Translations under genes and position numbers: made by a program | Shown: positions 1,282 to 62,730 of the stretch, piece after piece | Layout: each line of letters begins with the position of its first letter | Numbering within the stretch: the first letter of the stretch is position 1 | The notes under the pieces: generated by a model | Database searches by the model: none | What the model was told of the DNA's origin: nothing | Seen by the model: only the letters and a program-made list of their open reading frames with translations | From: Selaginella moellendorffii | Lineage: Eukaryota > Plantae > Lycopodiophyta | Length of the DNA: 64,000 bases | Direction: 5' to 3' | NCBI RefSeq assembly: GCF_000143415.4 | Contig: NW_003314349.1 | Span: forward strand, 71,172-135,171

Positions 1282-1474
1282 ATACCTTTCTCGGCCTTTT
1301 GGCTAAGATCAAGTGTAGTATCTGTTCTTATCAGTTTAATAGCTGATATGGGACCACGTGTCCCAACGCTATTAACCTAATTTTTTGTGGGAGGGGGGCC
1401 ACCGGTAGCTTGCTACCCGGTCCTCCACGTGTCGCTTTGGTCTTACACTATCGCCTTAGCCTGGCACAACCCAA
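1282..1474 (+). ncRNA. U2: U2 spliceosomal snRNA (copy 1)
   Basis: ATACCTTTCTCGGCCTTTTGGCTAAGATCAAGTGTAGTATCTGTTCTT 5' end, branch-point recognition GTAGTA, Sm site AATTTTTTG, stem-loops III/IV (a few destabilising changes versus copy 2). 3' end approximate. Confidence 0.95.
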
Positions 1475-1606
1475 CCCCCCCAAATTTTAAACTCAAGAAG
1501 CATTATTAGTCTTTGTTGTGGCTTACGAACACCGGTTCTCTTGAAAGGAAACGCCCTGAAATAAAACTATGGCGAAACGCGCATCACATTTGAGGGCTGG
1601 ATTCCC

Positions 1607-2322
1607 ATGGGCCAAGTCGGTTTGCCAGCAAGCGCCATATGGTCTCGGAGAGGACGCTCGTCGAGGCGAGCATTCCAGATAAGATGTCCTGACCCAAGCT
1701 TCTTCTCGTCTGTGGTTCATAGCTTGGCGGCCGCTGAGCTCGCCATGGGGCTCCCAGAGCTCTGGAGCTCGACGTGAAGCGCTACAAGCTGCTGCTCTAC
1801 GAGGCTGGAGGACACTTCAAAAGTTCCACACGGAGAAGGAAGCTGGGATGTTTGCAACAGTGATCGTCCAGCTCGCGGTCCGCGCAGCTCCAGCAACTAC
1901 CTCTTGACTATCTTCTTTTGCGGCTGCGAGCACCAGCTCGAGGAAGTTACTGGCGGATCGAGGCTGTGCCTGGACGTGGAGTTCATTTGTGTCTTCGGTG
2001 AAAGAGCTTCTCTGGGAATGGGTCGAGAAAGGCGGCGGCGGCGTGGTGCAGAGAGCAAACGCGCCCAGAAGATCGAACGCACCCCTGATGCAACTCGCCA
2101 CGGTAAGCATCGATCTCTACTCTAGTTTTTTCCATTTCTAAGCGTTTGTGGCTTTGGCAATAGCGTGCGGCGAGGCCGAGGACTCAAGAGGAAGATGATG
2201 ATAGCTACGATGACGATGACTCATATGCATACTTTCTCAACCGCGAGGAGTAGCACTTGGCGATCCCGCTGGCTCACCAAGACTAGCCTCTCGTTTGCCG
2301 GGCTCAAGGGCCACGACCGAGA
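1607..2322 (+). pseudogene. Microbial-type 2OG-Fe(II) dioxygenase relic (copy 1)
   Basis: Frameshifted motifs in order: GQVGLP, QAPYGLGE.TLVEASI, YKLLLYEAGGHF, H-TEKEAGMFATVIVQL, FFCGCEHQLEEVTGGSRLCL, LAIPLAH..KTSLSFAGLKGHDR; putative 61-nt GT-AG intron at 2103-2163. Confidence 0.75.
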
Positions 2323-2381
2323 ACTTTTCTCGCTGCGATCAAGGCTTGCGGCTGCTGTGCAGAGGGGAGGCTGTGGAGATC

Positions 2382-5300
2382 TGTAGGAATAATGATGAAC
2401 ACGACAAGCAGTCCGAATCGTGATCAGATCTCTAGTGATTTCCGATTTGATTGAAGTTGTATATATATACAGCCATATATGAATCAAGGTGTGTGTGTTG
2501 AAGTGAAATTCGTTGTTCTTGCTCCGCTTTTCTTTCTTGGTATCGGAGCTTAGTTTCTGAACTCTTTCTTCTCCTTTCTTTGTGCCTCACATCATGAGCT
2601 GCAGCAAAGTTGGATTGATCTTGCTTCATGCCTTTGATGGGAGGAGAGGGTTCAACACCTGGTCCGAGAAAATGATGCGCGTGCTGCAGATGGAAGAACT
2701 CTGGGAAATCGTTTCACCACCGACAATCGCTGCAGATGCTCGTACGCGGCGAGCCCTTGCTGCATCGGGAGCTTCAACTTTGGTGGAAGGAGAAGTCGTG
2801 GATGAAGAGGCAATTCGTGCCTCTGTTGCAGCAGCTCGACAACAGCTTGATCCAGGGGAATAAGCTGTGCTGGAGAAGAAGGAATCTCGAGCAAAAGGAT
2901 TGATTCTTTCTAAGCTTGCAGATGCCCTTATGATGCGTTTGCGTCATAAGTGTGCTTCTGAGATCTGGGCTCATCTCCACAACAAGTATGCTGTTCTTTC
3001 CCTCTCCAAGATTAGCATGGTCGAGACTTGCATTCGTGAGACCCGTTTTCATCCAGGCGAGAACTTTGAAGAGTTCCTCGCCGAGATGCAAGATCTGTGG
3101 ATGGAGCTTGAAGGCAGTCCAGCAGCGTTCAACGAAAGCAAGAAAGTTCTGGCACTTTGCGAGGCCATGCAAGATTCATCTTTTAGTTCTTTCATCCCTA
3201 CCGTTCGCATGATGTCGCTCAACTTTGAACAAGCTGAGCAAACTTTATGCTCGGAGCTGGCTGCGAGAGGTTTGATTGTGGACTTTGATCAGAGGCCTTC
3301 CCATGTTTTGATCTCACAGTCTACATCAAATGCTTCTGCATCAATCAATCAATCAATCAGGGACTGATTCAGCTCTGTGGGCTGGAAATCATCGAGGCAG
3401 AGGAGGCCACGGAAGAGGAGGATGAGGCAGAGGTCACGGGTTTAGGAGAAATCCGCAGCAGCAGCAGAATTCAGGGAATTCTGGTAAAGAAGCAGTAGTT
3501 TGGGATTGTTTTGTGGGCAAAAACAAACAGGAATGTTGGACTTGTGGGATGCCAGGACACTACTCCAAGGATTGCCCAGTTGCAGCTTGGCTGCAGCGCA
3601 TGAACATAGGGCTCGCAGCAAATGCTCAGGAAGGGGAAACACAGGAACTTGCGGCATCATCTGAGGTAGCAGTTCCAAATGTTTCTGAAAAACTGACCAT
3701 CGATTCAGGTTCAGAGAGACACCTGATGCAAAGCGGGTCAAACTTTGTGCAGTTGCGTGCTGCAAAAGGGAAGTGCATTCGTGTGGGAGATGGAAGCATT
3801 TTATTTGTTTATGCAACTAGGGATGTGCGAGTTCCACTGGGAAGAAAGTCTTTGCTCTTGAAGAATGCATGGTATGTTCCAAAGATAGTGAAGAATTTGG
3901 TTTCTGTAGCCAGGCTTACGGATGAAGGTCTGGATGTGAATTTCTCCAAACATCAATGTCAAGTTCTTGCAAATGGCCGTCCATTACTACATTTTCCCAG
4001 ATGTGGTAACCTGTTTGAGAAGGAGATAGCTTTTGGAGAAAAATTGAATGCTCCTGAGATATGCATAACTGCAGATAGTTCTCTCTGGCATTCTCGACTT
4101 GCACATGCCAATCCCCCTCTCATCAGGCATATGCAGAAGCAGGAGCTTGTGGATGGCTTCAACGACCACGTTCTTCAAAGTTTAGCAAAATGTCACACTT
4201 GCATTCTTGGCAAGCAAACCCGTCGTACTTTCAAACCTGTTGTGATCAAAAGCACTCGTCCCTTGCAGCTCATTCACTCAGATGTTTGTGGACCCATGCG
4301 ACTGTTTGCTCGAATGGCACGAAGTATTTTGTGACATTTACAGATGATTTCTCCAGGCACACGGACGTCTTCTTTCTTCGTCACAAAGATGAAGTCTTCA
4401 GCAAATTCAAGCAATTCATAGTAGAAGCCGAAGTGAAAACTAGTCAGAGGGTTGGTTGTTTACATACTGATTCAGGAGGGGAATACGTCAACAAGTCCTT
4501 TCAGCAGTTCTGTGCTGAACGAGGAATTCTTCATCAGTGCTCTTGCTCTCATACCCCTCAACAGAATGGAGTCTCTGAGCGCAAGAATAGGACAATCATG
4601 AACGTAGTTCGGTGCTTCCTTCAAGAATCAGGACTACCAAAATTCCTCTGGGCTGAAGCAGTCAGATCAACTGTGCATGTTCAAAACCTTCTCCCTCATT
4701 CTCGCAATCCCAACAAGATCCCAGAAGAGCTTTGGACTGGTCAAAGACAATCGGTGGTGCATCTCAAGCGTTTTGGTTGTTTAAGCTTTGCAAAAAGGGT
4801 GGATGAGCATCTCAGCAAGTTGGAGAGCAGAAGCAAGCTGGCCTTTCTTGTTGGATACGATTCCAATTTAAAAGGATATCGCCTGTACCAGCCTGGTAAT
4901 CATCAAATTTTTGTAAGCACTGATGTTCGTTTTGATGAAAGAACAATCTACAAAGATCATGTTCAAGAAGAAGGAAGCTCAGATCAAAACATGAACTAGA
5001 CTCCGGAAGAATGGAGTTGGGATGGCGTTGAAGATGGTGATGAAGATGACGATGATCTGACAATCATCTATCCCTCATCTCCTTTAGCAAACAATCATCC
5101 AACACCAGTCTCTGGATCTTTTCTTTCTGAAGAACAGGGCGATGTTGCTCATCGTGCACGAACTGGAGAAGTCGACAGGCTCACACGTCATCTACCATTC
5201 AATGTGGAGAACTATGGGCGGACATCATCTAGATGATCAAGCAGAGCACCTCATCCCAAGCAATGGTCTTTTGCAGCAACAGAAATAGCTTTTGAACCAG

Positions 5301-7021
5301 TCAACTTTGAGCAAGCGATTTAAGCTCCTGATGCAGATAAGTAGATTTCAGCAATGCAAGATGAGTTGAATTTTCTTGATGAGAACCAGACTTATGACTT
5401 GGTGGAAGCTCCTGAAGGACGTGAAGTTGTTGGATCACGCTGGGTGTTCAAACTTCACAGAAATCTTGATGGATCGGTATAGCGTTACAAAGCAAGACTT
5501 GTTGCTCAAGGATATTCACAAGTTCCTGGAGTGGATTTTGATGAGACGTTCTCACCAATTGTGAAGCAGACAAGTATCAGAATGCTTATAACTTTTACAG
5601 CGGAGTTTGGTTTGTGCGCACATCACATGGACGTAAAAACAGCCTTCCTTAATGGGAACTTGAAGGAGGAGATATTTATGCGGCAACCCCTAGGCTTTGA
5701 GTTTTTTGGATTACAGTGCTCCGAACTTGTCTGCAAGCTTTGCAAGGCTCTTTATGGCCTTAAGCAGGCTTCCCGTCAGTGGTATGAATGTTTGGATTCT
5801 TTTCTTATGGATCTCGGTATGCAGAGGTTGAACAGCGATGGAAATCTATATCTTCTTCAGCAGGGTGATCACTTTGTTGTGAGAGCAGTTTATGTGGACG
5901 ACTGTTTGATTGTCAGCAACAATGACACTGTTTTGAAGGATGTGAAGATCAAGCTTATGAACAGGTTTGTGATGAAGGACTTAGGAGCTGTGTGGCAGCT
6001 GTTAGGGATGGAAGTTGACAGGGATGAAGCAGACAGGACAATCACCCTCACACAGCGCCAATATGTGAAGAAGCTTCTCAACCAGTTCAACATGACAAGT
6101 TGCAAATCCGTGGCTACACCAGTCGTCACTGGCATCAAGTTCACAAGCAAGATGGATGATTTATTTGATCAGCCCTCAGTCTACCGATCGCTTGTTGGAG
6201 GACTACTCTACCTCGCCAACATGACTCGCCCTGACATCTCCTTTGCCGTTGGTCTCCTCAGCCAATACATGCAGTCTCCGAGTTGTTATCATTGGCAGAT
6301 GGCGAAGAGAGTTTTGAGGTATTTGAAAGGAACAGCTGCTCATGGACTGGTTTACAAATGCTCAGGTCAATCCAAATTTGTTCTTCAAGCTTACTGCGAT
6401 GCAGATTGGGCTGGCAACTTGGATACACGACATTCAGCCTCCGGAATTTGCTGCATAATTGCTGGTGCTCCAGTTTCATGGGGAAGCAAGAAGCAAACGA
6501 CAGTTGCTCTTTCCAGTGCATAAGTAGAATACATAGCTGCCAGTACAGCAGCAAGGGAGATCATCTGGCTTCGTTGATTACTTGGAGAACTCAATCAACA
6601 GTAATCAAATGTGACCATTCTGCATTGCGACAGCAGAAGTGCAATCGCCATGTCAAAGAATCCTGTGTTTCATGCTTGTACGAAACATATAGACGTGCAA
6701 CATCACTTCATTCGCGAACATGTAGCAGCCGGAGATCTTCACCTGGAATATGTTCCTTCACAATATCAGTTGGCAGACCTTCTAACCAAGCCACTTTCGG
6801 AGCTCACATTCATCAAGCTGAGGAATCAACTTGGAGTGTCAAGCACCCTCAGCTTGAAGGGGGAGTGTAGGAATAATGATGAACACGACAAGCAGTCCAA
6901 ATCGTGATCAGATCTCTGGTGATTTCCGATTTGATTGAAGTTGTATATATGTACAGCCATATATGAATCAAGGTGTGTGTGTTGAAGTGAAATCCGTTGT
7001 TCTTGCTCCGCTTTTCTTTCT
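2382..7021 (+). mobile_element. Ty1/copia LTR retrotransposon, full length but inactivated
   Basis: 156-bp LTRs 2382-2537 and 6866-7021 (4 transitions apart), TSD AGATC, iMet PBS TGGTATCGGAGC at 2538, PPT GAAGGGGGAG; gag, CCHC knuckle CWTCGMPGHYSKDC, protease IDSG, integrase, RT (YVDD) and RNase H in copia order, with stops and a frameshift. Confidence 0.97.
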
Positions 7022-7319
7022 AGATCAACTCCCGGCTTCTCTGAAGAAAGGTATGGCTCACTCCAGCGTTTTCACTCGTCAACATGTATGCAAAATCAGT
7101 GACACGCAGGGAGTTTATGATCTTTGGCTGCATCGACAACGGCCAAGACGAGCTCGCTCTGGAGCTCTTCCGGCGCATGGTGCGAGAGATCCACGAGCAA
7201 ATCCGGGACAAAGAGTCGCCGCAATGGCTCGTTTGATGCGTGTCGTGGTCCACAATACCACGTCGGATTCTCTCTCTCGCGTCCGTGGATCGAAACATCA
7301 TTTAGGGTTTCAAGTCCCA

Positions 7320-8235
7320 ATGGATTCTCGTGCATACCATTCCCTGGGAACGACCCCACTGATGTGCTTCAGAGATGTTATAGAGCTCCTGGAGTTGCGT
7401 TTGTCAAGGCGCATGCAATTGATGGCCATGAGGTATTGCAAGCACTACAGCATGACATTGCAAGACTTGGTGTTGCGACTTGTAGATTCCACAGATTTCC
7501 ACAACGATGAAGTGGCTTTGACGTGGCTTAATTATGTGTTGGTCGAGGTCAAAAAGAACGCGACCGATGAAGTGGAGGAAGTTGAAGACCTCCACGAGGC
7601 CGTAAGAGCAGTGATTATATCACAGCAAAGAGCCGAGCTGGAGGACAAAGACGAGGATTACGGATCAAACAGGATCATCAAGACAGCCTATACTTGGTCA
7701 AGACTCTGCCTGAACATCTTTCAATGCAGTGGGTATCTGCACTTGCCACAGTCGCGGAAGCAGAAATCCTTTTGGCGGCCGGTGATACAGACATATTGAG
7801 CAGTGAGCACAGCGAAACTGAGGGACAAACTTGCCGAGTACAGCAGATGGGACATGAGATTGTGCAACCAAGGAGAGCAAGTTTTCCAGAGCTTGTTCCT
7901 CATACCATTCTTGCTGGATGGTGCCCCAAGCGAAGTGGAAGCCTGGCCTTTATCGCACCAGCTGCTTTCTCCTGGAGCCTCTATAAGTCGAGTGCACACT
8001 TTGGAGCCGCCGTTCAGGAGATCACAAGTCAGGCAGCTGCTGCATGATGGAGCTTCTCCACTCAAGGAGAGGCTGGCGATTCTGGAGGATTTGGGGTTTT
8101 CCTATAGTTTCACAAATGAACTCTAGGATGTGTTTGAGGTTGGCAAAGTTTTTGACCAGAAACAGCTCAGCGCACTTGAGAAGATCTATGAGTAATACAA
8201 GACAAACACTAGCTATGGTCAAGCTAGTTTGTTAA
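7320..8235 (+). pseudogene. Disrupted copy of the orphan ORF at 14621
   Basis: Near-identical to 14621-15565 but with deletions, frameshifts and premature stops. Confidence 0.85.
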
Positions 8236-8847: not shown

Positions 8848-10956
<2,109 letters not shown>

Positions 10957-12550: not shown

Positions 12551-12615
12551 AGTGAGTTATTCAATTTCCTTTTTTTTTTTAAGAACAAATCAATATTATT
12601 AATTAGTCAAATTAA

Positions 12616-12620
12616 GCGGG

Positions 12621-12663
<43 letters not shown>

Positions 12664-12688
12664 GCGTGTTCGATCCACGTTCACCGCA
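12616..12688 (+). tRNA. tRNA-Phe(GAA), intact
   Basis: 73-nt plant cytosolic tRNA-Phe sequence; anticodon stem TCAGA/TCTGA and T-stem pair; TTTTT terminator follows. Confidence 0.97.
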
Positions 12689-13152
12689 TTTTTCGTTTCG
12701 CATGTAGTTGTCTCTATCGAAGTTACAGCAGTATGAATCCAGCTCTAGGAAAGTAGCTTCTTCTTCTAAACTGCTTCCACACCGAGCTTATAAAAAGAAA
12801 GTGAATTTAAAACCTACAAAGCTTTGAGCTTTAGAAAGAAAATCAAAAGACAACTATTCTAGAGCACGCTGGAACACAAGATCAATAGAAAAGCTTTGGC
12901 AATTTCTTACCAAAGCACCACCTATTGCAAGAACTTATTAGAACGTAAAACAAAAAAAAGAGACTTTAGGGTTCCAGGAAAAAGCTCATTTACTAATCAT
13001 AAACCTATATAAACAGCATAAAACAAGATTTTTTTATGACGATCAAATTGATGAAAATAAAAGTCTGAGATGGCAACCACCTGTACCCTAATTTTTGACA
13101 CGTCGGCGCTCAACGTGGGTAAAGGAGTGCGCGACACGTAAGCGTGCGCCCT

Positions 13153-13200
13153 ATCCCACATGCGAAGGCGCATAATCGTGCCGGGGCTTGAGTATATAAA
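13153..13200 (+). promoter_or_regulatory. snRNA USE + TATA
   Basis: ATCCCACATGCG at 13153 and TATATAAA at 13193, same spacing as copy 1. Confidence 0.85.
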
Positions 13201-13224
13201 CAGAGGGCTGGGCAAAGAAAACTC

Positions 13225-13417
13225 ATACCTTTCTCGGCCTTTTGGCTAAGATCAAGTGTAGTATCTGTTCTTATCAGTTTAATAGCTGATATGGGACCAC
13301 GTGTCCCAACGCTATTAACCTAATTTTTTGTGGGAGGAGGGCCACCGGTAGCTTGCTACCCGGCCCTCCACGTGTCGCTTTGGCCTTACACTACCGCCTT
13401 AGCCTGGCACAACCCAA
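13225..13417 (+). ncRNA. U2: U2 snRNA (copy 2, best-paired stems)
   Basis: Canonical U2 5' end, GTAGTA, Sm site, stem III GGAGGGCC/GGCCCTCC and GGTAGC/GCTACC. Confidence 0.96.
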
Positions 13418-13554
13418 CCCCCCCAAATTTTAAACTCAAAAAGCATTGTTAGTCTTTGTTGTGGCTTACAAACATCGGTTCTCTTGAAGGAAACGCCATG
13501 AAATAAGATTATGGCGAATCGCGCATGGACACGTTTTAGGGTTTAAGAGAGGTA

Positions 13555-14270
13555 TGGATTCCCAAGCAAGCGCCATATGGTCTCGGAGAGGACGCTCGTC
13601 GAAGCGAGCATTCCAGATAAGATGTCCTGCCCCAAGCTTCTTCTCGTCTGTGGTTCATGGCTTGGCGGCCGCTGGGCTCGGAGCTCGACGTGAAGCGCTA
13701 CAAGCTGCTGCTCTACGAGGCTGGAGGGCACTTCAAAAGTTCCACAGGGACACGGAGGGGATGTTTGCAACAGTGATCGTCCAGCTCGTGGTCCGCCAGG
13801 GGCTGGAGTGCTCCAGCTTTGATTTCTCGTAAGGCAGCTCCAGCAACTACCTCTTGACGATCTTCTTTTGCGGCTGCGAGCACCAGCTCGAGGAAGTTAC
13901 TGGCGGATCGAGGCTGTGCCTGGTTTTCAGCCTGGACGTGGAGTTCATTTGTGTCTTCGCTGCCTCGAGTGAAAGAGCTTCTCTGGGAATGGGTCGAGAA
14001 AGGCGGCGGCGGCGGCGTGGTGCAGATAGCAAACGCCCCCAGAAGATCGAACGCACCCCTGATGCAACTCGAGCATCGATCTCTACTCTAGTTTTTTCCA
14101 TTTCTAAGTTTTTGTGGCTTTGGCAACAGCGTACGGCGAGGCCGAGGACTCAAGAGGGAGATGATGATAGTTACAATGACGATGACTATCCCCTTTAATC
14201 ATATGCATACTTTCTCAACCGCGAGAGTACAAGAGGAAGCACTTGTCAATCCCGCTGGCTCAACGACCGA
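13555..14270 (+). pseudogene. Microbial-type 2OG-Fe(II) dioxygenase relic (copy 2)
   Basis: QAPYGLGE, YKLLLYEAGGHF, FHRDTE-GMFATVIVQL, FFCGCEHQLEEVTGGSRLCLVFSL; frameshifts and deletions. Confidence 0.75.
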
Positions 14271-14502
14271 GAACTTTTCTTGCTGCGATCAAGGCTTGCG
14301 GCTGCTGCGCAGTGAAAGGGGAGGCTGTGGAGATTGACTCCCGGCTTCTCTGAAGAAAGGCATGGCTCATTTTCCCTCGTCGACATGTACGCGAAATCGG
14401 CGACGTGCAGGGAGTTTATGATGCGTCGACAACGGCCAAGACGAGCTCGCTCTGGAGCTCTTCCGGCGCATGATGCGAGAGATCCACGAGCAAATCCGGG
14501 AC
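14266..14502 (+). pseudogene. Scrap of the neighbouring PPR gene
   Basis: Deleted copy of ~18283-18723 (CCGAGAACTTTT...GAGCTCTTCCGGCGCATG...GAGCAAATCCGGGAC); also at ~2318-2381/7022-7210 and ~61350-61840. Confidence 0.8.
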
Positions 14503-14620
14503 AAAGAGTCGCCGGTTTGATGCGTGTCGTGGTCCACAGTACCGTCGGATTCTCTCTCTCGCGTCCGTGGATCGAGTCCAAGTCCGAGAACTTGAACATC
14601 ATTTAGGGTTTCAAGTCCCA

Positions 14621-15565
14621 ATGGATTCTCGTGAATACCATTCCCTGGGAACGACCCCACTGATGTGCTTCAGAGATGTTATAGAGCTCCTGGGGTTGCG
14701 CTTGTCAAGGCGCATGCAATTGATGGCCATGAGGTATTGCAAGCACTACAGCATGACATTGCAAGACTTGGTGTTGCGCCTTGTAGATTCCACAGATTCC
14801 GGTTGCGTCCACAACGATGAAGTGGCTTTGAAGTGGCTTGATTATGGGTTGGTCGAGGACAAAAAGAACGAGACCGATGAAGTGGAGGAAGTCGAAGACC
14901 TCCACCAGGCCGTAAGAGCAGTGATTATATCACAGCAAAGAGCCGAGCTGGAGGACAAAGACGAGGATTACGGATCAAAGGTGACCAAGCTCATACAGGA
15001 TCATCAAGAGAGCTTATACTTGGTCATGAAGACTCTGCCTGAACATCTTTCAATGGAGTGGGTATCTGCACTGGCCACAGTCGCGGAAGCAGAAATCCTT
15101 TTGGCGGCCGGTGATACAGACATATTGAGCACAGCGAAACTGAGGGACAAACTTGCCGAGTACAGCAGATGGGACATGAGATTGTGCAACCAAGGAGAGC
15201 AAGTTTTCCAGAGCTTGTTCCTCACACCAGTCTTGTTGGATTGTGCTCCAAGGGAAGTGGAAGCAGGGCCTTTATCGCACCAGCTGCTTTCTCCCGGAGC
15301 CTCTACAAGTCGAGTGCACACTTTGGAGCCGCCGTTCAGGAGGTCACAAGTCAGGCAGCTGCTGGATGATGGAGCTTCTCCACTCAAGGAGAGGCTGGCG
15401 ATTCTGGAGGATTTGGGGTTTTCCTATAGTTTCACAAATGAATTCTGGGATGTGTTTGAGGTTGGCAAAGTTTTTGTCCAGAAACAGCTCAGCGCAATCG
15501 AGAAGATCTACGAGCAATACAAGACAAAGACTAGCTATGGTCAAGCTGATTTGGTTTGGAAGTAA
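14621..15565 (+). CDS. Orphan intronless protein (~314 aa), no family recognised
   Basis: Long open frame from ATG (MDSREYHS...) preceded by a telo-box TAGGGTTT; the two other copies are broken. Confidence 0.6.
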   Translation: MDSREYHSLGTTPLMCFRDVIELLGLRLSRRMQLMAMRYCKHYSMTLQDLVLRLVDSTDSGCVHNDEVALKWLDYGLVEDKKNETDEVEEVEDLHQAVRAVIISQQRAELEDKDEDYGSKVTKLIQDHQESLYLVMKTLPEHLSMEWVSALATVAEAEILLAAGDTDILSTAKLRDKLAEYSRWDMRLCNQGEQVFQSLFLTPVLLDCAPREVEAGPLSHQLLSPGASTSRVHTLEPPFRRSQVRQLLDDGASPLKERLAILEDLGFSYSFTNEFWDVFEVGKVFVQKQLSAIEKIYEQYKTKTSYGQADLVWK

Positions 15566-15713: not shown

Positions 15714-17389
15714 ATGCGTAGCCACTTCTTCCCATTAGTTGTGCTAGCTCTACTTTCAGTTCCTGTGAATCTAGCTCTGAACTTTTCATTTTTTGAAGAA
15801 GCAGCAGATGCTAGATTCGCACCAGAAAGCTATGAGTACATCATTGTTGGAGGAGGTGTTTGTGGATGTGCACTAGCAGCAACTCTGTCGCAAAACTCCA
15901 AAGTCCTGCTCCTGGAAAGAGGCGACTCCCCGTATGGAAATCCCGTGTTCATGAGAGAAGAGAATTCTGCATTGAGCATTCTCGATCAAGCTCATTCTCA
16001 AGGATTTCTTACCACAGATCTGGTACCAAATGCAAGAGCAAGAATCCTTGGGGGAGGAAGCTCTATAAACGGTGGCTTCATGACTCGTGCACCAAAGTCC
16101 GAGATCGACCGGATCGTGGGCTTGGATGACTACGCTCAAGTGAATGCATCTTATGAGTGGCTTGAGAACGGGATAGCGTCGCTGCCTCGGACTGGACCCT
16201 TTCAGACCGCTTACAAGAATGCGCTGCTTCAAGCTGGTGTCACGCCCGATAATGGTGAAACTTACGATCATCTTCCAGGAACGAAGGTTGGAGGCACTCT
16301 CTTTGATGAGAATGGAACTCGGAGGCCTGCATCAAACTTGCTGCCTCTCTATGCGAATCTGACCAACGTCCAAGTCGTGATAAACGCTCTTGTTCAGAAG
16401 ATCATCTTCTCAGGTAATTATTCAATTTTTATAAGTTGCTTGAAACCCATGTGTTTTCGTTTTTTCTAAATAGGTTCTGGTACTCCAAGAGCTGTAGGTG
16501 TTCAAGTCATAGCCCGTTTATCCGGGAAAACGTTTGCTATTCTTCTCCGGAATTCATCCAAAAGTGAAGTGATACTCACAGCAGGTGCAATAGGCACTCC
16601 TCAGCTGCTGATGCTAAGTGGAATTGGTCCCAGAGACCACCTTCAAGCGAAGAACATCGAAGTGGTGGTGGATTCACCCGAGGTTGGAAAAAACATTGTT
16701 GACAATCCATCCACCAGAGTCTACATCCTCTCACCATCCCCAGTTGAAGTTTCTCTTATCCAGAGTGTGGGAATCGATCCTTCTGGAACGTATTTCGAAG
16801 CGTTAAGTGGTATACAGCACAGTCCAACCGTTGTGGTCACGCAGAAGGTTGCTAACCCTCGCTCAAGTGGAGAGATCCGACTTTTAACTCTGAATGCTGA
16901 TGATAATCCTCAAGTCACCTTTAACTACTTGAAAGACCCTGTTGATATGCAGACGTGCGTGAGTGGAGCCAACACACTTGAAGAAGTTTTACTAACTTCC
17001 AGCTTCAGCCATTTCATTACTGGTCTTCAGCCCATGCCTTCTGGTGGCACTGTGGCTGCTCCAAATCGAAAGAATCCTTTACTGAAGCCAACCATCAACA
17101 CAACTCTTGCACTATATTGTCGACTAAGTGTGGCAACCATGTATCATTACCATGGTAGCTGTAGAGTGGGAAAGGTGGTGGATCCTACTTACAGAGTTCT
17201 TGGGGTCGAAAAACTCCGAGTGCTTGATGGCAGCGTGTTTGATTTCTCTCCAGGGACGAATCCTCAGTCGACTTTCATGATGCTAGCAAGGTACAATTTT
17301 ATTTCTCATTTTTATTCTTCCTTGTTTGATTTGAACTTATGAGTCGCCTCTGCAGGTACATGGGATTGGAAATGATTAAGCAGGCTTAA
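15714..17389 (+). CDS. GMC oxidoreductase, HOTHEAD-like (3 exons)
   Basis: Signal peptide, IIVGGGVCG FAD motif, [21 protein letters not shown] and PGTNPQ active-site segments; introns at ~16414-16474 and ~17291-17355. Confidence 0.93.
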
Positions 17390-17559: not shown

Positions 17560-19344
17560 ATGATCGCTCGCGCTAGCAATGCGCTGCCGGTCCAGGCGCG
17601 CGATGGGCGCGGCGACAGGGCGGAGATTCTCGCGGCATTGAAGGAGTGCGCCAAGCGCAAGGATCTAGCGCGGGGCAAGAGGATCCACGCGGCGGCGGTG
17701 GAATGCGGCCTGGATTCCGACCTGTTCGTGGGATCGAGCCTGGTGAGCATGTACTCCAGGTGTGGCAGCGTCGCTAGATCGCGCATGGTCTTCGATGCGA
17801 TGGAATTCCTGGACAGGGTATCCTGGAATTCTCTGGTGCTGGGCTATGCGGAGAATGGCTGGGGGGAGATTGCGCTGAAGCTCTTCCTGGCAATGCAAGA
17901 CGAGGGGCATTGCTCGCCGGATTCCTCCACGTTTGTGGCAGCGATCAAGGCGTGCTCGTCTCTCTCGGAGAGGGAATCAGGGGTGGAAGTGGAAGGAATG
18001 GATCGAAGAATCAAGGTGGAGTCGCTGGAAAAAGGGATGAGAATTCACAGGCAAGCTTGGAGCAGTGGATTCGAGAGAGATATCTTCGTCGCCAACGCTT
18101 TGATCCACGCGTATGCCAAGTGTGGGAGCTTGGTGGATGCCACCAAAGTTTTCCACGCGATGCCCCGGCGTGACGAAGTTTCTTGGAACGCATTGATGGT
18201 GGGAGCGGCGGACAATGGCGAGCCGGAGCTAGCTCTGCAGCTCCTGGTTTCCATGAAGAGCGAGGGACGAGTAGCTCCCAATCCGAGAACTTTTCTAGCT
18301 GCGATCAAGGCTTGCGGCTGCTGCGCAGTGAAAGAGCATGCCAAGGAGATCGACTCCCGGCTTGTCAAGCTTGCTTCTTTGGAGAAAGGTATGGCTCTCC
18401 ATTCTTTGGCTTGCGAGAACAAGTGTGACTCCAGCGTTTTCGTTGCCAGCGCCCTCGTCGACATGTACGCGAAGTGTGGAAGCATCGCCGACGCGCAAAG
18501 AGTTTTCGACTCCATGCAAGATCGCAACGTCATCTCGTGGACGTCCATGATCTTTGGCTGCGTCGACAACAGCCAAGACGAGCTCGCTCTGGAGCTCTTC
18601 CGGCGCATGGTGGAAGAGAAGCGGTGTCCTCTCGATGCCTGGACTTTCGTGGCGGCTCTCAAGGCGTGCGGGAACTTGGCGGCGCTGGAAACCGGCCGAG
18701 AGATCCACGAGCAAATCCGGGACGCTGGACTGGAAAGAGAGGCCTCCATCGCCGCGACGCTGGTCGATTTCTATGGAAGGTGTGGAAGCATGGATGAAGC
18801 TCTCGAGGCATTCCAGCTAAGCTCGCAGGAGGATATGGTGGCCTGGACGGCCTTGGTCGCAGGATATAGCAGGCAGGGAGACACTCCACGAGTTCTGGAG
18901 CTCTTCCAGGCGCTGCTAGACAAAGGCCTTCGTCCGGACGTGATGATCTTCTCCTCGCTTCTCTCGGCTTGCAGCCACGCCGGCTTGGTCGATCTTGGCA
19001 AACGTTACTTCGAAGAGATGAGCTCAAAGTTTGGGCTGGCTCCCGGGATCCATCACTACCACTGCGTGGTGGATCTTCTCAGCAGAAGTAACAGGCTCGA
19101 GGAAGCGGTGGCTATGGTGGCGAGGATGCCATTTGAGGCGACGCTGGTAACTTGGACGACAGTGCTCGCAGGGTGTCACAAATGGAAGAACTCGATGGTG
19201 GGGAGAATGGCGTTTCAGCGTTTGATTGCTCTGGACAGGAGATTAGACTCGGCCTACGCTCTTATGGCGAACATCTATGGAAGTCTCGGGCTGTGGAAGG
19301 AGAGGCAAGAGATCCAAGCGATGAGAAGTATGAACGTTTTGTAG
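17560..19344 (+). CDS. PLS-class PPR protein with E-type C-terminus, no DYW
   Basis: Repeats of the type SLVSMYSRCGS/ALVDMYAKCGS...VSWNAL, LSACSHAGLV...HYHCVVDLLSR; single exon. Confidence 0.95.
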   Translation: MIARASNALPVQARDGRGDRAEILAALKECAKRKDLARGKRIHAAAVECGLDSDLFVGSSLVSMYSRCGSVARSRMVFDAMEFLDRVSWNSLVLGYAENGWGEIALKLFLAMQDEGHCSPDSSTFVAAIKACSSLSERESGVEVEGMDRRIKVESLEKGMRIHRQAWSSGFERDIFVANALIHAYAKCGSLVDATKVFHAMPRRDEVSWNALMVGAADNGEPELALQLLVSMKSEGRVAPNPRTFLAAIKACGCCAVKEHAKEIDSRLVKLASLEKGMALHSLACENKCDSSVFVASALVDMYAKCGSIADAQRVFDSMQDRNVISWTSMIFGCVDNSQDELALELFRRMVEEKRCPLDAWTFVAALKACGNLAALETGREIHEQIRDAGLEREASIAATLVDFYGRCGSMDEALEAFQLSSQEDMVAWTALVAGYSRQGDTPRVLELFQALLDKGLRPDVMIFSSLLSACSHAGLVDLGKRYFEEMSSKFGLAPGIHHYHCVVDLLSRSNRLEEAVAMVARMPFEATLVTWTTVLAGCHKWKNSMVGRMAFQRLIALDRRLDSAYALMANIYGSLGLWKERQEIQAMRSMNVL

Positions 19345-47395: not shown

Positions 47396-48339
47396 ATGAT
47401 AAGTCACACTTTTGAGTTGTAAAGAACGCAAAGAAGAACTCGATTTTGAGTGATCATATAAATGTAAACACTTGGTTGACACAATCTTTCTCTAGAGCTT
47501 CTTTTGTTCTTCCTTTTAGTTTCTTTACTCCAGTAACCATTCCAATCACAATGCCAAACCATCTTCTTGCTTTTTCCGCAGTGGAGAAGGCCAGGTTAAA
47601 TCGCGAGGACAGCACAAAATCCATGCTTTGCTTCGAGCGCCTCAATGTAAAACTCGATTTTTTGAGCGTCCAAGGCATTGGTTGAGCTTCAATCATAGGT
47701 GGTGGAGATTGATTAGCAGTCCATGACGAGGCTCTTTCGTGTTTGTTACCTCCCATGGTTTGCCAAGAGAATTCAAGACGTTTATGAGTGTGGCGTCCGG
47801 CAAGGGTGCTTCTCCCGCAAATCTCTCGAGCCTCTGTGTAGATAGACAAGATCTTACACACCAAAGACTTGACAAGAACAATGTACTACACCGTCTTCTT
47901 GCAATCTCGCTGCTTAAATCTCAAACCAGGAGCTCTTGAAGAAGAATGGAGAGATTTAAGGCAATACCTGGGATCTTCTACAGAAGATGTGAGCATCATC
48001 CTGTGTTGTCAGTGAGATCGTCAATGATACTGGCCTTCTGAAGAACACCAATCAGTTGCAGTGGAAGCTCTGCAAAGAACAATGATGCTCAAGACGACAA
48101 AGATCTGAGCAAACCTTGATAGGATCTAACGCGATAGTGGGGCAGTGAGCTGTGCTATTTGATGGTTTCACGGCAAACTCCATGTTTTCTTCATGGAAAA
48201 ATGCTAGCATGAGCAAACAAAAGTACACTTCCACCTTCATGGTTAGGATGTCCTCTTTGATCGATGCATTAGACAAAAGTTGCATCTTGAACACAGTTAG
48301 AGAACTGCAAATGTTCTTGATCTCAAATTGTTGGTAACT

Positions 48340-50560
48340 ACTTTCTTGTAAGAGTTAGAAGAGTGTAAATATTAAATAGTGTGCTCAAACAATTATTAAC
48401 TATCTTAACCCATACATAATTATTAAATTTAGGACTAGAGCTTTTTCTTTCACCTTTTATGATTTGTGTTACACACTATACTTTTATAAAGGCTCTAAAA
48501 TTAATTTAATCCAATCTCAAGCTAATCTAAAATCTAATTAAGATATGGTCCTAAATACTCATCCATATGCATAAAAAGCTTTGAGTGTAAATTCCATGAG
48601 TAAAGGTTTAAGATTTGATTTCACAGTGCCAAGTAGTAGCGAATATACTTTTCAGTAAATATAAAAATATGGTAATAACACTTAATTTATGGCATATAAA
48701 TTTTTTAAAATGCAAACTATTACTCCCAAAATTACATGAATGGGAAAAAATTCAAGAAAAGTTCATTCTAGTAGTTTTTACTCATAAGTATATCTTTTAT
48801 GAAACTTTTGGCTTTATTAACTAATAAAAATTTAATTTAATTTGTAATAATATTTTGATAAATTTATTATTTAGTTTTTATTAAATTATTTATGATTTAA
48901 TATGAATATAAAATAAACTAAATTTAAAATTTTAATTTAAAATTTTTTAAATTATAAACATAAAGATGAAATATTATAAATATATCAAAATTTCTAGAAT
49001 TTTATTTTTTATATTTATCTTTTTTAACACAACTAACATGCTTTAATTTAGAAAAAATAATTATTAACAGCCAAAAGATATTATTATTACAGCTATATAT
49101 AATTTAATTAAGAAAGTTCACTTAAGATATTTTTATTTTGCAACTTATACAAATTCAATATAAGCACGTACTTCATTAAAAAATATTAAAGTACTTATTA
49201 AATGAAAAATTACATGCTTAGCTATAAAAGATATTAAAAGAATGAATATTACACATGGTTTAAAAAAATATTAAAATATCTTAGTTATTTTAAATATAAT
49301 ATTTTTAATTTGTTTTTACAAAGAAACTCCTTAATATTTAATATGATATACATTAATAAATCATTCAGATTCTACTTTTATATATTATAAGTATAAAAGT
49401 TATTTCTTTAATTATTTATTCAATTTTTTTATAAAAGTGATTTATACAATGATTTAGCTCTTTTTAAATTTTATAAAATTTATTTTATATTTTTTGTAAT
49501 TTAATTGTATAAAAACTTAAAATTGGATATTTATTCATCCAAAAAAAACATTTAACTATGCTTTACCTTTAGAAAATCAAGAAAATTTAGTTTTAAAACA
49601 TAATAGTGAAATAAATATAGCCTACACAAAAAAATTCTAAATATCTATGTTTAATACTAATCATTATTTATTATTTTACATTGTTTTTTTATAAAATGAT
49701 TTTCTATAGGTAATTTTTAGCAATAATTTCTAATTATCTTTTATGAATATCAAGTACTATTAATAAAAAAAAATTCTTAACATAAATTGACTAGATACTA
49801 TTATGTATAAATAATAATAATTATAATATTAGTGGTAGTAGTAGTAATGAAAATTGTTAATAATATAATTTTATTTTCTGGAATTTCATAATATTATTTA
49901 TATAATTAATATATCATTTTAGAATTTTTTAAATAAAACTAAGCTTTTTGTACTTTTCTAATATAACTTATATTAAAAAAAAGACTTATAAAGATTTTTA
50001 TAACTACATTTTCCCAAATAAATTTTATTAAATATAAAATCTGTAGATATTCATTTCACTTACCTAAAAAAACCAACATATATATATGATCCTTGAAATG
50101 TGGTGTAAGTTACTTACACAACCGTAAAATATCAAAAATTAATATAAGATTATAGGAAGGAACCACATAAGCATTATGGTGAATTTTAAACTTCTTGAGG
50201 CTAAAGGTAAAAAAAGAGATTGATGGCTATTTTGAGTTATAAGATAATTAGGGAGCTTATAGAAAGACTTTGGCATAAGCTCTATTGATTAAAGTTAATA
50301 TCTTTAGAATGAAAATCACCAATCTTGAGCACATACCAAAAGCCAAGAATCTGTTAAACAAATGTTATGACTAGACCTCCTAGGATTTCCGATTGCAAGT
50401 CACATCAAATTTGGTAATATTGTAAATTGAAAACAATTTAACTTTTAGTTTTATATAAACAGAACTGCTAATTATTAATTAAAAAGAAAACCAAAAACTA
50501 AAAAGATAAGCTCCACTAAATAACATTTTCAAAAACTATATTTCTCGGGTGAACTAAGGT
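48340..50560. other. Very AT-rich non-coding island
   Basis: Long A/T runs and almost no ORFs, in sharp contrast to the flanks; AT content judged by eye only. Confidence 0.8.
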
Positions 50561-61271: not shown

Positions 61272-61534
61272 TGGGACTTGAAACCCTAAATGATGTTCCG
61301 ACTTGGACTCGATCCGTGGACGCGAGAGAGAGAATCCACGACACGCATCAAATGGCTGGATCTCTCGCACCATGCGCCGGAAGCGCTCCAGAGCGAGCTC
61401 GTCTTGGCCGTTGTCGACGCAGCCAAAGATCATGGACGTCCACGAGCTGACGTTGTGATGTTGCATGGAGTCGAAAACTCCCTGCGCGTCGCCGTGTCGA
61501 CGTGTCGACGAGGGAAAATGCTGGAGTGAGCCAT

Positions 61535-62375
61535 ATCTCTACTCTAGTTTTTTCCATTTCTAAGTCTTTGTGGCTTTGGCAATAGCATGCGGCGAGGCTG
61601 AGGACTCAAGAGGGAGATGATGATAGCTACGATCTATCCCTTGTATTCATATGCATACTTTGTAAACCGTGAGGAGTACAAGAGGAAGCACTTGGCGATC
61701 CCGCCAAGACTAGCCTGGCTCAAGGGCCACGACCAAGAACTTTTCTAGCTGCGATCAAGGCTTGCGGCTGCTGTGCAGTGAAAGGGGAGGCTGTGGAGAT
61801 CGACTCCCGGCTCGTCAAGCTCGCTTCTCTGAAGAAAGGTCGATGCTTACCTTGGCGAGTTGCATCAGGGGTGCGTTTGATCTTCTGGGCGCGTTTGCTC
61901 TCTGCACCACACCGCCCCCGCCTTTCTCGACCCATTCCCGGAGAAGCTCTTTCACTCGAGGCAGCACTATGAACTCCACGTCCAGGCTGAAAACCAGGAT
62001 CCGCCAGTAACGCCCTCGTGCTGGTGTCTCAAAAGAAGACCGTCAAGAAGTGCTGCCTTGCGAGAAATCAAAGCTGGAGCACTCCAGCCCCTGGCGGACC
62101 GCGAGAGCTCCTCCGGTGTGGCCGCGAGAGCTCCTCTGTGGGGAGATGGACGATCATTGTTGCAAACATCCCAGCTTCCTTCTCCGTGTCCATGTGGAAC
62201 TTTTGAAGTGTCCTCCAGCCTCGTGGGGCAGCAGCTTGTAGAGCTTCACGTCGAGCTCCAGAGCTCTGGGATCCAGCCCCAGAAGCTTGGGGCAGGAGAT
62301 CTTATCTGGAATGCTCGCCTCGAGGAGCGTCCTCTCCGAGACCATATGGCGCTTGCTGGCAAACCGACTTGACCA
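61535..62375 (-). pseudogene. Microbial-type 2OG-Fe(II) dioxygenase relic (copy 3; 3' part 61535-61840 re-inverted)
   Basis: YKLLPHEAGGHF, FHMDTEKEAGMFATMIVHLP, GHTGGALAVRQG on the minus strand; LKGHD segment on the plus strand. Confidence 0.72.
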
Positions 62376-62537
62376 GACCCTGCTGGCCCCTGGAAATCCA
62401 CAGCTCTCTTAAACCCTAAAATGTTCTGTGCATCTTTCTTACTTTTATTCAAGAGAACCGATGTCGTTGACGTAAGCGTTATAAAATAAAAAGACTAAAA
62501 TAATACTCCTGCTTCTTGGGTTTAAAATTTGGGGGGG

Positions 62538-62730
62538 TTGGGTTGTGCCAGGCTAAGGCGGTAGTGTAAGGCCAAAGCGACACGTGGAGAGCCGGGTAGC
62601 AAGCTACCGGTGGCCCTCCTCCCACAAAAAATTAGGTTAATAGCGTTGGGACACGTGGTCCCATATCAGCTATTAAACTGATAAGAACAGATACTACACT
62701 TGATCTTAGCCAAAAGGCCGAGAAAGGTAT
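62538..62730 (-). ncRNA. U2: U2 snRNA (copy 3)
   Basis: Reverse complement of copy 2, essentially identical and without indels. Confidence 0.95.

What the first reader, a model, noticed from the sequence alone, without database searches (positions are those of the whole stretch)
1607..2322. Fossil microbial-type 2OG-Fe(II) dioxygenase downstream of each U2 gene: candidate horizontal transfer
Seen: piecing frames together across three copies (1607-2322, 13555-14270, 61535-62375) gives G.VGLP...QAPYGLGE.TLVEASI...YKLLLYEAGGHF.FHRDTEKEAGMFATVIVQLP..GHTGGALAVR...FFCGCEHQLEEVTGGSRLCLVFSL...LAIPLAH..KTSLSFAGLKGHDR, i.e. an HxD...H iron triad and the 2OG-binding Arg. Knowledge (recalled): this motif series (APFG.G..TLVD, YKLLLY..G.HF..H.DTEK..GMFATL..QLP, CEH...VT.G.R..L.YNL, H.Y....LKG.D) typifies an uncharacterised prolyl-hydroxylase-like family of fungi, oomycetes and bacteria, not the plant DOXA/B/C oxygenases. 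A putative 61-nt GT-AG intron (2103-2163) is of host-like size. All three copies share the frameshift at CACTTCAAAAGTTCCAC. Inference: a transferred gene that died before the cassette triplicated; a live paralogue may exist elsewhere in the genome. The ORF track misses it because of the frameshifts.
Basis: partly seen in the sequence, partly recalled or inferred. Interest (0 to 1): 0.75.

Follow-up and report, generated by a model that had tools for sequence, protein, structure and literature searches.

The report
Dead oxygenase gene fragment beside U2 genes
Downstream of each of three U2 snRNA genes in this spikemoss (Selaginella moellendorffii) region lies the same broken, truncated copy of a resident iron/2-oxoglutarate oxygenase gene; it is an ordinary duplicated pseudogene, not a separate fossil of gene transfer from a microbe.

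Summary
All three places carry a decayed fragment of a prolyl-hydroxylase-like Fe(II)/2OG oxygenase gene (tblastn of intact relatives against the window, E 1e-24 to 1e-26, HSPs in several frames).

The fragment covers only about residues 20-293 of a 930-1060-aa protein. It starts about 125-140 nt after the U2 gene (copy 1) and is fused at its 3' end to a PPR gene fragment.

The three copies share four lesions (-2, -21, -8 and +2 nt), so the gene was dead before the ~3 kb cassette (U2 in all three, tRNA-Phe in two, the fragment) was copied.

The parent is a Selaginella moellendorffii family of at least 14 annotated gene models. One is an intact intronless 1029-aa ORF. The closest relative, EFJ13617, is 85-86% identical in DNA and itself frameshifted.

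The family also occurs in a moss and a liverwort. In an ML tree, land plants form one clade that follows the species tree (99/94) and lies outside the fungal and bacterial clades. An AU test rejects Selaginella+fungi (p 3e-6).

The "microbial-type family", "shared frameshift", "intron" and "live paralogue" points are therefore right. Horizontal transfer at this locus or into Selaginella is not supported.

Interest is low.

The parts
1282..1474 (+). U2 snRNA gene, cassette copy 1, with plant-type USE (T-C-C-C-A-C-A-T-G-C-G) and TATA upstream
   Evidence: Rfam RF00004 163.9 bits; promoter elements read
13225..13417 (+). U2 snRNA gene, cassette copy 2
   Evidence: RF00004 169.4 bits
62538..62730 (-). 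U2 snRNA gene, cassette copy 3 (inverted)
   Evidence: RF00004 167.4 bits
697..769 (+). tRNA-Phe(GAA), part of the cassette in copy 1. A second one lies at 12616-12688 in copy 2. Copy 3 begins inside this gene and has none.
1599..2322 (+). Oxygenase pseudogene fragment, copy 1. It corresponds to residues ~21-292 of P0002. It has 14 indels that are not a multiple of 3, in-frame stops, and has lost the R-D of the HxD motif.
   Evidence: tblastn; DNA alignment; indel table
2103..2163 (+). 61-nt GT...AG stretch, homologous in position and sequence to the annotated 54-nt intron of the P0002 gene model. It is absent from the intronless P0006 gene.
13540..14272 (+). Oxygenase pseudogene fragment, copy 2. 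It has 13 frame-breaking indels. It keeps H-R-D and C-E-H..R in different frames. A 44-nt deletion removes the S-L-S-F-A-G-L-K-G piece.
61837..62415 (-). Oxygenase pseudogene fragment, copy 3, 5' part. It has 11 frame-breaking indels and has lost the Arg of the G-G-S-R-L piece.
61535..61812 (+). Copy 3, 3' part: rest of the intron, acidic linker and start of the PPR piece. It is locally re-inverted relative to the rest of copy 3.
   Evidence: self-blastn (2113-2381 matches 61535-61801 in direct orientation); alignment
2308..2361 (+). PPR gene fragment fused to the 3' end of the oxygenase fragment (residues ~239-256 of the PPR ORF at 17560-19344). It continues at 7066-7209 after the retroelement. 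The matching pieces are 14255-14350 and 14422-14502 in copy 2, and 61727-61852(+) and 61344-61493(-) in copy 3.
2382..7021 (+). LTR retrotransposon inserted into copy 1 only. LTRs are 156 nt and 97.4% identical; the target-site duplication is AGATC.
1819..1820 (+). Shared +2 nt frameshift between the codons for G-G-H-F-K and F-H-R-D. It is also at ~13735 in copy 2 and ~62204 in copy 3. Other shared lesions are -2 at 1648, -21 at 1674 and -8 at 1694.

Best explanation
The stretch is a non-functional relic: the 5' third (about codons 20-293) of a Selaginella moellendorffii gene of the 'group A' branch of a resident family of prolyl-hydroxylase-like Fe(II)/2-oxoglutarate oxygenases.

The family has a ~420-aa N-terminal module and a long, probably helical C-terminal part, 850-1060 aa in all.

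Proposed history:
1. The fragment lost its start. It now begins about 125-140 nt after a U2 snRNA gene in copy 1.
2. It lost everything after the L-K-G-H-D-R motif, where it is joined to a piece of a PPR gene.
3. It picked up at least four lesions (-2, -21, -8, +2 nt).
4. The ~3 kb segment (U2 and the fragment in all three copies, tRNA-Phe in two) was then copied by segmental duplication, once in tandem (11.9 kb spacing) and once inverted.
5. Each copy decayed further on its own: private deletions, an LTR-retroelement insertion in copy 1 and a local inversion in copy 3.

The fragment does nothing today. Its link to U2 is only that both lie in the same duplicated segment.

Shown: the homology, the truncation, the shared and private lesions, the family and its distribution. 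Inferred: the order of events, and that the U2 genes are the functional cargo of the segment.
For: Homology:
- A profile of stop-free pieces finds four S. moellendorffii family members plus one weak unidentified hit among 1.84 billion proteins.
- tblastn of P0002, P0004 and P0006 against the window gives E 1e-21 to 1e-26 at the three places, covering query residues ~9-292 and nothing of the C-terminal 640 aa.

Closest relative:
- The P0002 locus (L001) is 85-86% identical in DNA. The three copies are 90-94% identical to each other.
- The window copies and P0002 share the V-K-E-L-L..E-W-V-E-K-G-G-G-G stretch and the acidic D/S/Y linker, which other paralogues lack.

Lesions: four are shared. 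Each copy has 11-14 frame-breaking indels.

Breakpoint: the 3' end runs into PPR sequence.

Family:
- At least 14 Selaginella gene models exist.
- P0006 is an uninterrupted 1029-codon ORF.
- H138, D140 and H198 are invariant and R208 is near-invariant.
- An AF2 model of the P0006 N-terminal module (pLDDT 84.8) matches bacterial P4H, PHD2 and PiuC structures (E 2e-8 and weaker).

Segmental duplication structure.
Against: - None of the annotated paralogues is a near-identical parent; the best is 85-86% in DNA. The true source copy may be lost or unannotated.
- I could not search the whole Selaginella genome for further copies of the cassette.
- No transcript data were available, so 'does nothing' rests on the lesions alone.
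- The annotators did build a gene model (EFJ10512.1) on copy 3.
Confidence: 0.9

Rival explanations
1. One reading: the fragment is the fossil of a gene horizontally transferred from a fungus, oomycete or bacterium into this locus or into Selaginella. It died soon after arrival and was then triplicated.
For: Outside land plants the family is found in fungi and bacteria, and the ESM Atlas neighbours are oomycete and fungal clusters. No seed-plant member appeared in the two word searches. Most Selaginella members have no or one intron.
Against: The nearest relatives of the fragment are Selaginella paralogues, at 85% DNA identity against about 30-35% protein identity to microbes. Selaginella has at least 14 models in two old subgroups. 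Chromosome-scale moss (Ceratodon purpureus) and liverwort (Calypogeia fissa) genes group with Selaginella in species-tree order, with support 99/94. The AU test rejects Selaginella+fungi, p 3e-6.
Confidence: 0.04
2. The chimeric piece (oxygenase 5' part plus PPR fragment) was assembled and spread by a gene-capturing transposon (Helitron or Pack-MULE type), not by plain segmental duplication.
For: Fragments of two unrelated genes are joined and the unit is repeated. The P0002 locus also holds loose family fragments in both orientations. One family gene model (P0004) runs into a Helitron_like_N domain.
Against: The duplicated blocks extend well beyond the cassette (15.9-21.9 kb matches 63.8-52.3 kb inverted) and include ordinary genes. 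No terminal repeats or Helitron ends were sought or seen. All copies lie within one 64 kb region.
Confidence: 0.06

Closest known systems
S. moellendorffii EFJ13617.1 / SELMODRAFT_424217 (P0002, UniRef D8SP67, named 'Prolyl 4-hydroxylase alpha subunit Fe(2+) 2OG dioxygenase domain-containing protein')
   Same: It is the closest relative of the fragment at 85-86% DNA identity. It has the same acidic linker, the same short intron at the same place, and the same motifs before and after the oxygenase core.
   Different: It is full length (933 aa) and lacks the four lesions shared by the window copies. It has its own 8-nt deletion just after D-T-E-K, which the gene model bridges with a 32-nt pseudo-intron, so it is probably dead as an enzyme too. 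No U2 gene lies beside it.
S. moellendorffii SELMODRAFT_403360 (P0006), the intact group A member
   Same: Same family and subgroup, with about 52% protein identity in the best HSP to copy 2. The full H..D..H..R set is present and the modelled fold is a double-stranded beta-helix.
   Different: It is an intact intronless 1029-codon ORF with a different linker sequence. The window copies are truncated and broken.
Prolyl-hydroxylase-type 2OG oxygenases with solved structures (Pseudomonas PPHD 4iw3/4j25, human PHD2, PiuC, B. pseudomallei 6n1f); Pfam PF13640
   Same: The parent family shares the fold and the iron/2OG ligand pattern: Foldseek E 2e-8 to 1e-5, and PF13640 at 21-34 bits against a cut-off of 27.
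   Different: Sequence identity is only 11-16%, and no PDB relative is found by sequence (E 0.13). The family adds a conserved ~200-aa extension (the L..P-L.H.Y and L-K-G.D motifs, then Y.G-N.G...W-P) and a 400-600-aa C-terminal part. Substrate is unknown.
Earlier finding of this scan, s1-355779 (intronless 990-aa 2OG oxygenase of the same genome, judged an old land-plant gene)
   Same: Same genome, same kind of protein (intronless, about 1000 aa, fungal/bacterial-looking), and the same conclusion reached here independently: present in moss and liverwort, not recently transferred.
   Different: I could not compare sequences with that finding, so identity of the family is likely but unproven. 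That locus is intact and this one is a relic.

Membership tests
2OG-Fe(II) oxygenase superfamily, PF13640 / prolyl-hydroxylase-like branch | Match to the Pfam model at or above its gathering score (27 bits) | tested here: inconclusive
   The window pieces alone give no hit because they are too short. Among parent-family members, P0012 scores 28.1, P0079 29.2, P0111 31.6 and P0051 34.2 and pass. P0004 at 26.3, P0007 at 26.2 and P0006 at 21.7 fall just short.
2OG-Fe(II) oxygenase superfamily, PF13640 / prolyl-hydroxylase-like branch | HxD...H iron triad and 2OG-binding Arg at the canonical spacing | tested here: met
   In the family, H138, D140 and H198 are invariant and R208 is at least 90% conserved. 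In the window the remains are there but in different frames. Copy 2 keeps H-R-D, C-E-H and S-R-L. Copy 1 has lost the R-D. Copy 3 has H-M-D and has lost the Arg.
2OG-Fe(II) oxygenase superfamily, PF13640 / prolyl-hydroxylase-like branch | Double-stranded beta-helix fold | tested here: met
   Tested on the intact paralogue only. The AF2 model of P0006 residues 1-462 has pLDDT 84.8 and pTM 0.82. The best Foldseek matches are 6n1f, 4iw3, PiuC and PHD2, probability 1.00. The broken window copies cannot be folded meaningfully.
2OG-Fe(II) oxygenase superfamily, PF13640 / prolyl-hydroxylase-like branch | An open reading frame able to encode the domain (a functional member) | tested here: not met
   Each copy has 11-14 frame-breaking indels and in-frame stops. 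The start and the C-terminal two thirds are missing. It is a pseudogene of the family, not a working member.
Horizontally acquired gene (recent, into Selaginella or this locus) | Recipient sequences nested inside a donor (fungal or bacterial) clade | tested here: not met
   In the careful IQ-TREE tree, land plants form their own clade (99/94), with an unidentified compact-genome eukaryote as sister (100/99). The main fungal clade and the bacteria lie elsewhere. The AU test rejects Selaginella+fungi, p 3.1e-6.
Horizontally acquired gene (recent, into Selaginella or this locus) | Absence from related host lineages | tested here: not met
   Orthologues lie on chromosome-scale scaffolds of Ceratodon purpureus (moss) and Calypogeia fissa (liverwort). 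Ferns, hornworts, seed plants and streptophyte algae could not be searched exhaustively with these tools.

The most novel reading that the evidence does not exclude
The parent family, not this fossil, entered the ancestor of land plants by an ancient transfer from a fungus-like or protist donor. Its nearest outside relative is an unidentified compact-genome eukaryote (P0111), followed by a mixed clade with Pseudozyma and EukProt sequences. It expanded in Selaginella and was lost in seed plants. Within it, the P0002/window sublineage gained a new short spliceosomal intron in an acidic linker that is intronless in its sister genes.
Probability: 0.25. Interest if true: 0.4.

Novelty: new member of a known kind. 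Interest (0 to 1): 0.15.

Why it matters
The practical effect is tidying up.

- It removes a horizontal-transfer candidate. The "microbial-looking" fossil is a decayed duplicate of a resident, old land-plant gene family.
- GenBank EFJ10512.1 is a chimeric model built on a pseudogene. EFJ13617.1 bridges a frameshift with a pseudo-intron.
- Minor positive points are a datable series of events (gene death, then tandem and inverted segmental duplication, then retroelement insertion and local inversion) around apparently intact U2 genes.
- It also points to an uncharacterised prolyl-hydroxylase-like family, expanded in Selaginella, whose substrate and deep origin remain open.

Tried and rejected
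Searches that gave nothing:
- Pfam on ten stop-free pieces.
- A word search with the 84-aa piece.
- PDB sequence searches with the piece profile and the 121-aa piece.
- tblastn against plasmids returned only chance hits, E 2 or more.
- Rfam on the P0002 locus found no U2 there, so the U2 link is not a family trait.
- The literature search found no paper on this family in Selaginella.

Ideas considered and rejected:
- The 332-aa ORF downstream (14567-15565) is not the family's C-terminus. Family proteins give no tblastn hit there.
- The loose N-terminal fragment upstream of P0002 (L001:7524-7864) is not the source of the window copies. It lacks their shared lesions.
- The intron is not old in the family. 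P0006 has none and P0012 has only a distant one.

All searches used stop-free pieces by reference, a profile of such pieces, or intact relatives compared with the window DNA.

Full report
**What is in the window.**

Rfam finds three full-length U2 snRNA genes: 1282-1474 (+), 13225-13417 (+) and 62538-62730 (-), at 164-169 bits. It also finds two tRNA-Phe genes just upstream of the first two. Each U2 gene keeps a plant-type upstream sequence element and TATA box.

A self-comparison shows that these genes sit in a ~3 kb segment present three times:
- Copy 1 is 641-2381 plus 7022-8225.
- Copy 2 is 12557-15547.
- Copy 3 is 63318-60337, inverted.

Copy 1 is interrupted at 2382-7021 by an LTR retroelement. 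Its LTRs are 156 nt and 97.4% identical, and the target-site duplication is AGATC. In copy 3 the piece 61535-61812 has been turned round again. Larger blocks around copies 2 and 3 are also duplicated in inverted order (15.9-21.9 kb against 63.8-52.3 kb). The setting is therefore segmental duplication.

**Checking the observation.**

The pieces alone are too short for Pfam, the word search, PDB or a plasmid tblastn.

I aligned only stop-free pieces of one frame (A3) and ran the profile against 1.84 billion representative proteins. There were five hits at E 0.001 or better:
- The gene model on copy 3 itself (P0001 = EFJ10512.1).
- Three other Selaginella moellendorffii proteins: P0002 = EFJ13617.1 at E 1.9e-9, P0003 and P0004.
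- One weak hit, P0005 (E 7.5e-4), which I did not identify.

P0001 matches copy 3 at 98-100%. This identifies the organism, in agreement with earlier notes of the scan.

tblastn of the relatives back onto the window hits exactly the three places, in several frames, with E 1e-20 to 1e-26. It covers query residues ~9-292 only.

**Anatomy of the relic.**

A DNA alignment with the P0002 locus (L001) shows 85-86% identity. The three window copies are 90-94% identical to each other.

All three copies share four lesions that the P0002 locus lacks:
- A 2-nt deletion in the codons for G-L-G-E-R.
- A 21-nt deletion.
- An 8-nt deletion.

Each copy has 11-14 indels that are not a multiple of three, plus in-frame stops.

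Homology starts at about residue 20 of P0002, which in copy 1 is about 125-140 nt after the end of U2. It stops right after the L-K-G-H-D-R motif (copy 1, about 2322). There the sequence continues as a fragment of a PPR gene, corresponding to residues ~238-388 of the intact PPR ORF at 17560-19344. The C-terminal ~640 residues of the family are absent from the window.

The 61-nt GT...AG stretch (2103-2163) is homologous in place and sequence to the 54-nt intron of the P0002 gene model. The intact paralogue P0006 has no intron. Group B member P0012 has only one, far downstream. The intron, if real, is therefore young and specific to this sublineage.

**The parent family.**

Two word searches find at least 14 S. 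moellendorffii gene models in two subgroups. The window copies belong to group A, with about 50-52% protein identity in the best HSP, against 38-39% for group B and about 30-35% for microbes.

The family shares a ~420-aa N-terminal module:
- H138, D140 and H198 are invariant, and R208 is nearly so.
- It sits at the edge of PF13640, scoring 21-34 bits against a cut-off of 27.
- It has no relative in the PDB by sequence.

An AlphaFold2 model of P0006 residues 1-462 (pLDDT 84.8) matches bacterial prolyl hydroxylase, PiuC and PHD2 structures (Foldseek E 2e-8 to 1e-5).

**Horizontal transfer?**

The profile search also returns:
- A moss gene (Ceratodon purpureus KC19_11G044100, on a 16.6 Mb scaffold).
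- A liverwort gene (Calypogeia fissa, on a 15.2 Mb scaffold).
- Many Basidiomycota and Ascomycota.
- Planctomycetes, actinobacteria and a gammaproteobacterium.

The ESM Atlas adds oomycete and fungal clusters as leads.

A careful IQ-TREE analysis (53 rows, 416 columns, LG+C20) gives these supports:
- Selaginella: 100/99.
- Moss plus liverwort: 99/91.
- Land plants together: 99/94.
- Land plants with one unidentified compact-genome eukaryote (P0111) as sister: 100/99.

The main fungal clade and the bacteria lie elsewhere. The AU test rejects a Selaginella+fungi clade (lnL difference 82.6, p 3.1e-6).

The family thus behaves as an old land-plant gene, expanded in Selaginella. I could not search ferns, seed plants or algae exhaustively. 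An ancient transfer into the land-plant ancestor stays open, but that concerns the family, not this locus. I could not compare sequences with it.

**Most likely history.**

1. A group A gene close to P0002 lost its 5' end and its 3' two thirds.
2. It became joined to a PPR fragment and accumulated frameshifts.
3. The segment carrying it and U2 (with tRNA-Phe in two copies) was then duplicated in tandem and in inverted orientation.
4. Private deletions, a retroelement insertion and a local inversion followed.

The lesions and duplications are shown. The order of events is inferred. The relic has no function, and its association with U2 is positional.

**Method note.**

The joined search was left out. 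It was replaced by a profile of stop-free pieces and by comparing intact relatives with the window DNA.

Noticed in passing
L001:10001-12899 (GL377631.1, gene SELMODRAFT_424217 / P0002): The closest full-length paralogue carries its own 8-nt deletion right after the D-T-E-K codons. The gene model bridges it with a 32-nt 'intron' (10411-10443), so about 40 residues of the oxygenase core are read out of frame. It is probably a pseudogene or a dead enzyme.
   Followed up: partly
L001:7524-7864 and L001:13045-14735: Loose fragments of the same family lie around the P0002 gene: an N-terminal piece upstream and C-terminal pieces in both orientations downstream. The family leaves debris at more than one locus.
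   Followed up: partly
window 14567-15565 (+); also 7370-8213 and 61221-60358: A 332-aa ORF without any Pfam match is part of the cassette. It is intact in copies 2 and 3 (it forms most of EFJ10512.1) and frameshifted in copy 1. It is unrelated to the oxygenase family.
   Followed up: partly
window 2382-7021: A 4.6 kb LTR retroelement (gag-like ORF near 2594) with very short 156-nt LTRs and TSD AGATC, inserted after the copy 1 / copy 2 duplication.
   Followed up: partly
window 15714-17342 and 17560-19344: An apparently intact GMC-oxidoreductase-like gene (two ORFs, by eye) and an intact 594-aa PPR gene lie just downstream of copy 2. Partial inverted duplicates of both lie near 56-60 kb and 63.5-63.8 kb.
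   Followed up: no
window 48001-50000: A sharply AT-rich stretch (GC 21% against 41-59% in the other 2-kb windows).
   Followed up: no
P0004 (SELMODRAFT_420502) and P0011 (SELMODRAFT_437525): Two family gene models are fusions. P0004 runs from the oxygenase module into a Helitron_like_N domain. P0011 has a glycosyltransferase-8 domain (PF01501) in front of the module. They are likely annotation mergers, or real chimeras.
   Followed up: no
P0104 (Bemisia tabaci, 57 Mb scaffold): A whitefly protein of this family falls inside the fungal clade on a long branch. It is either contamination or one more fungal-to-whitefly transfer.
   Followed up: no
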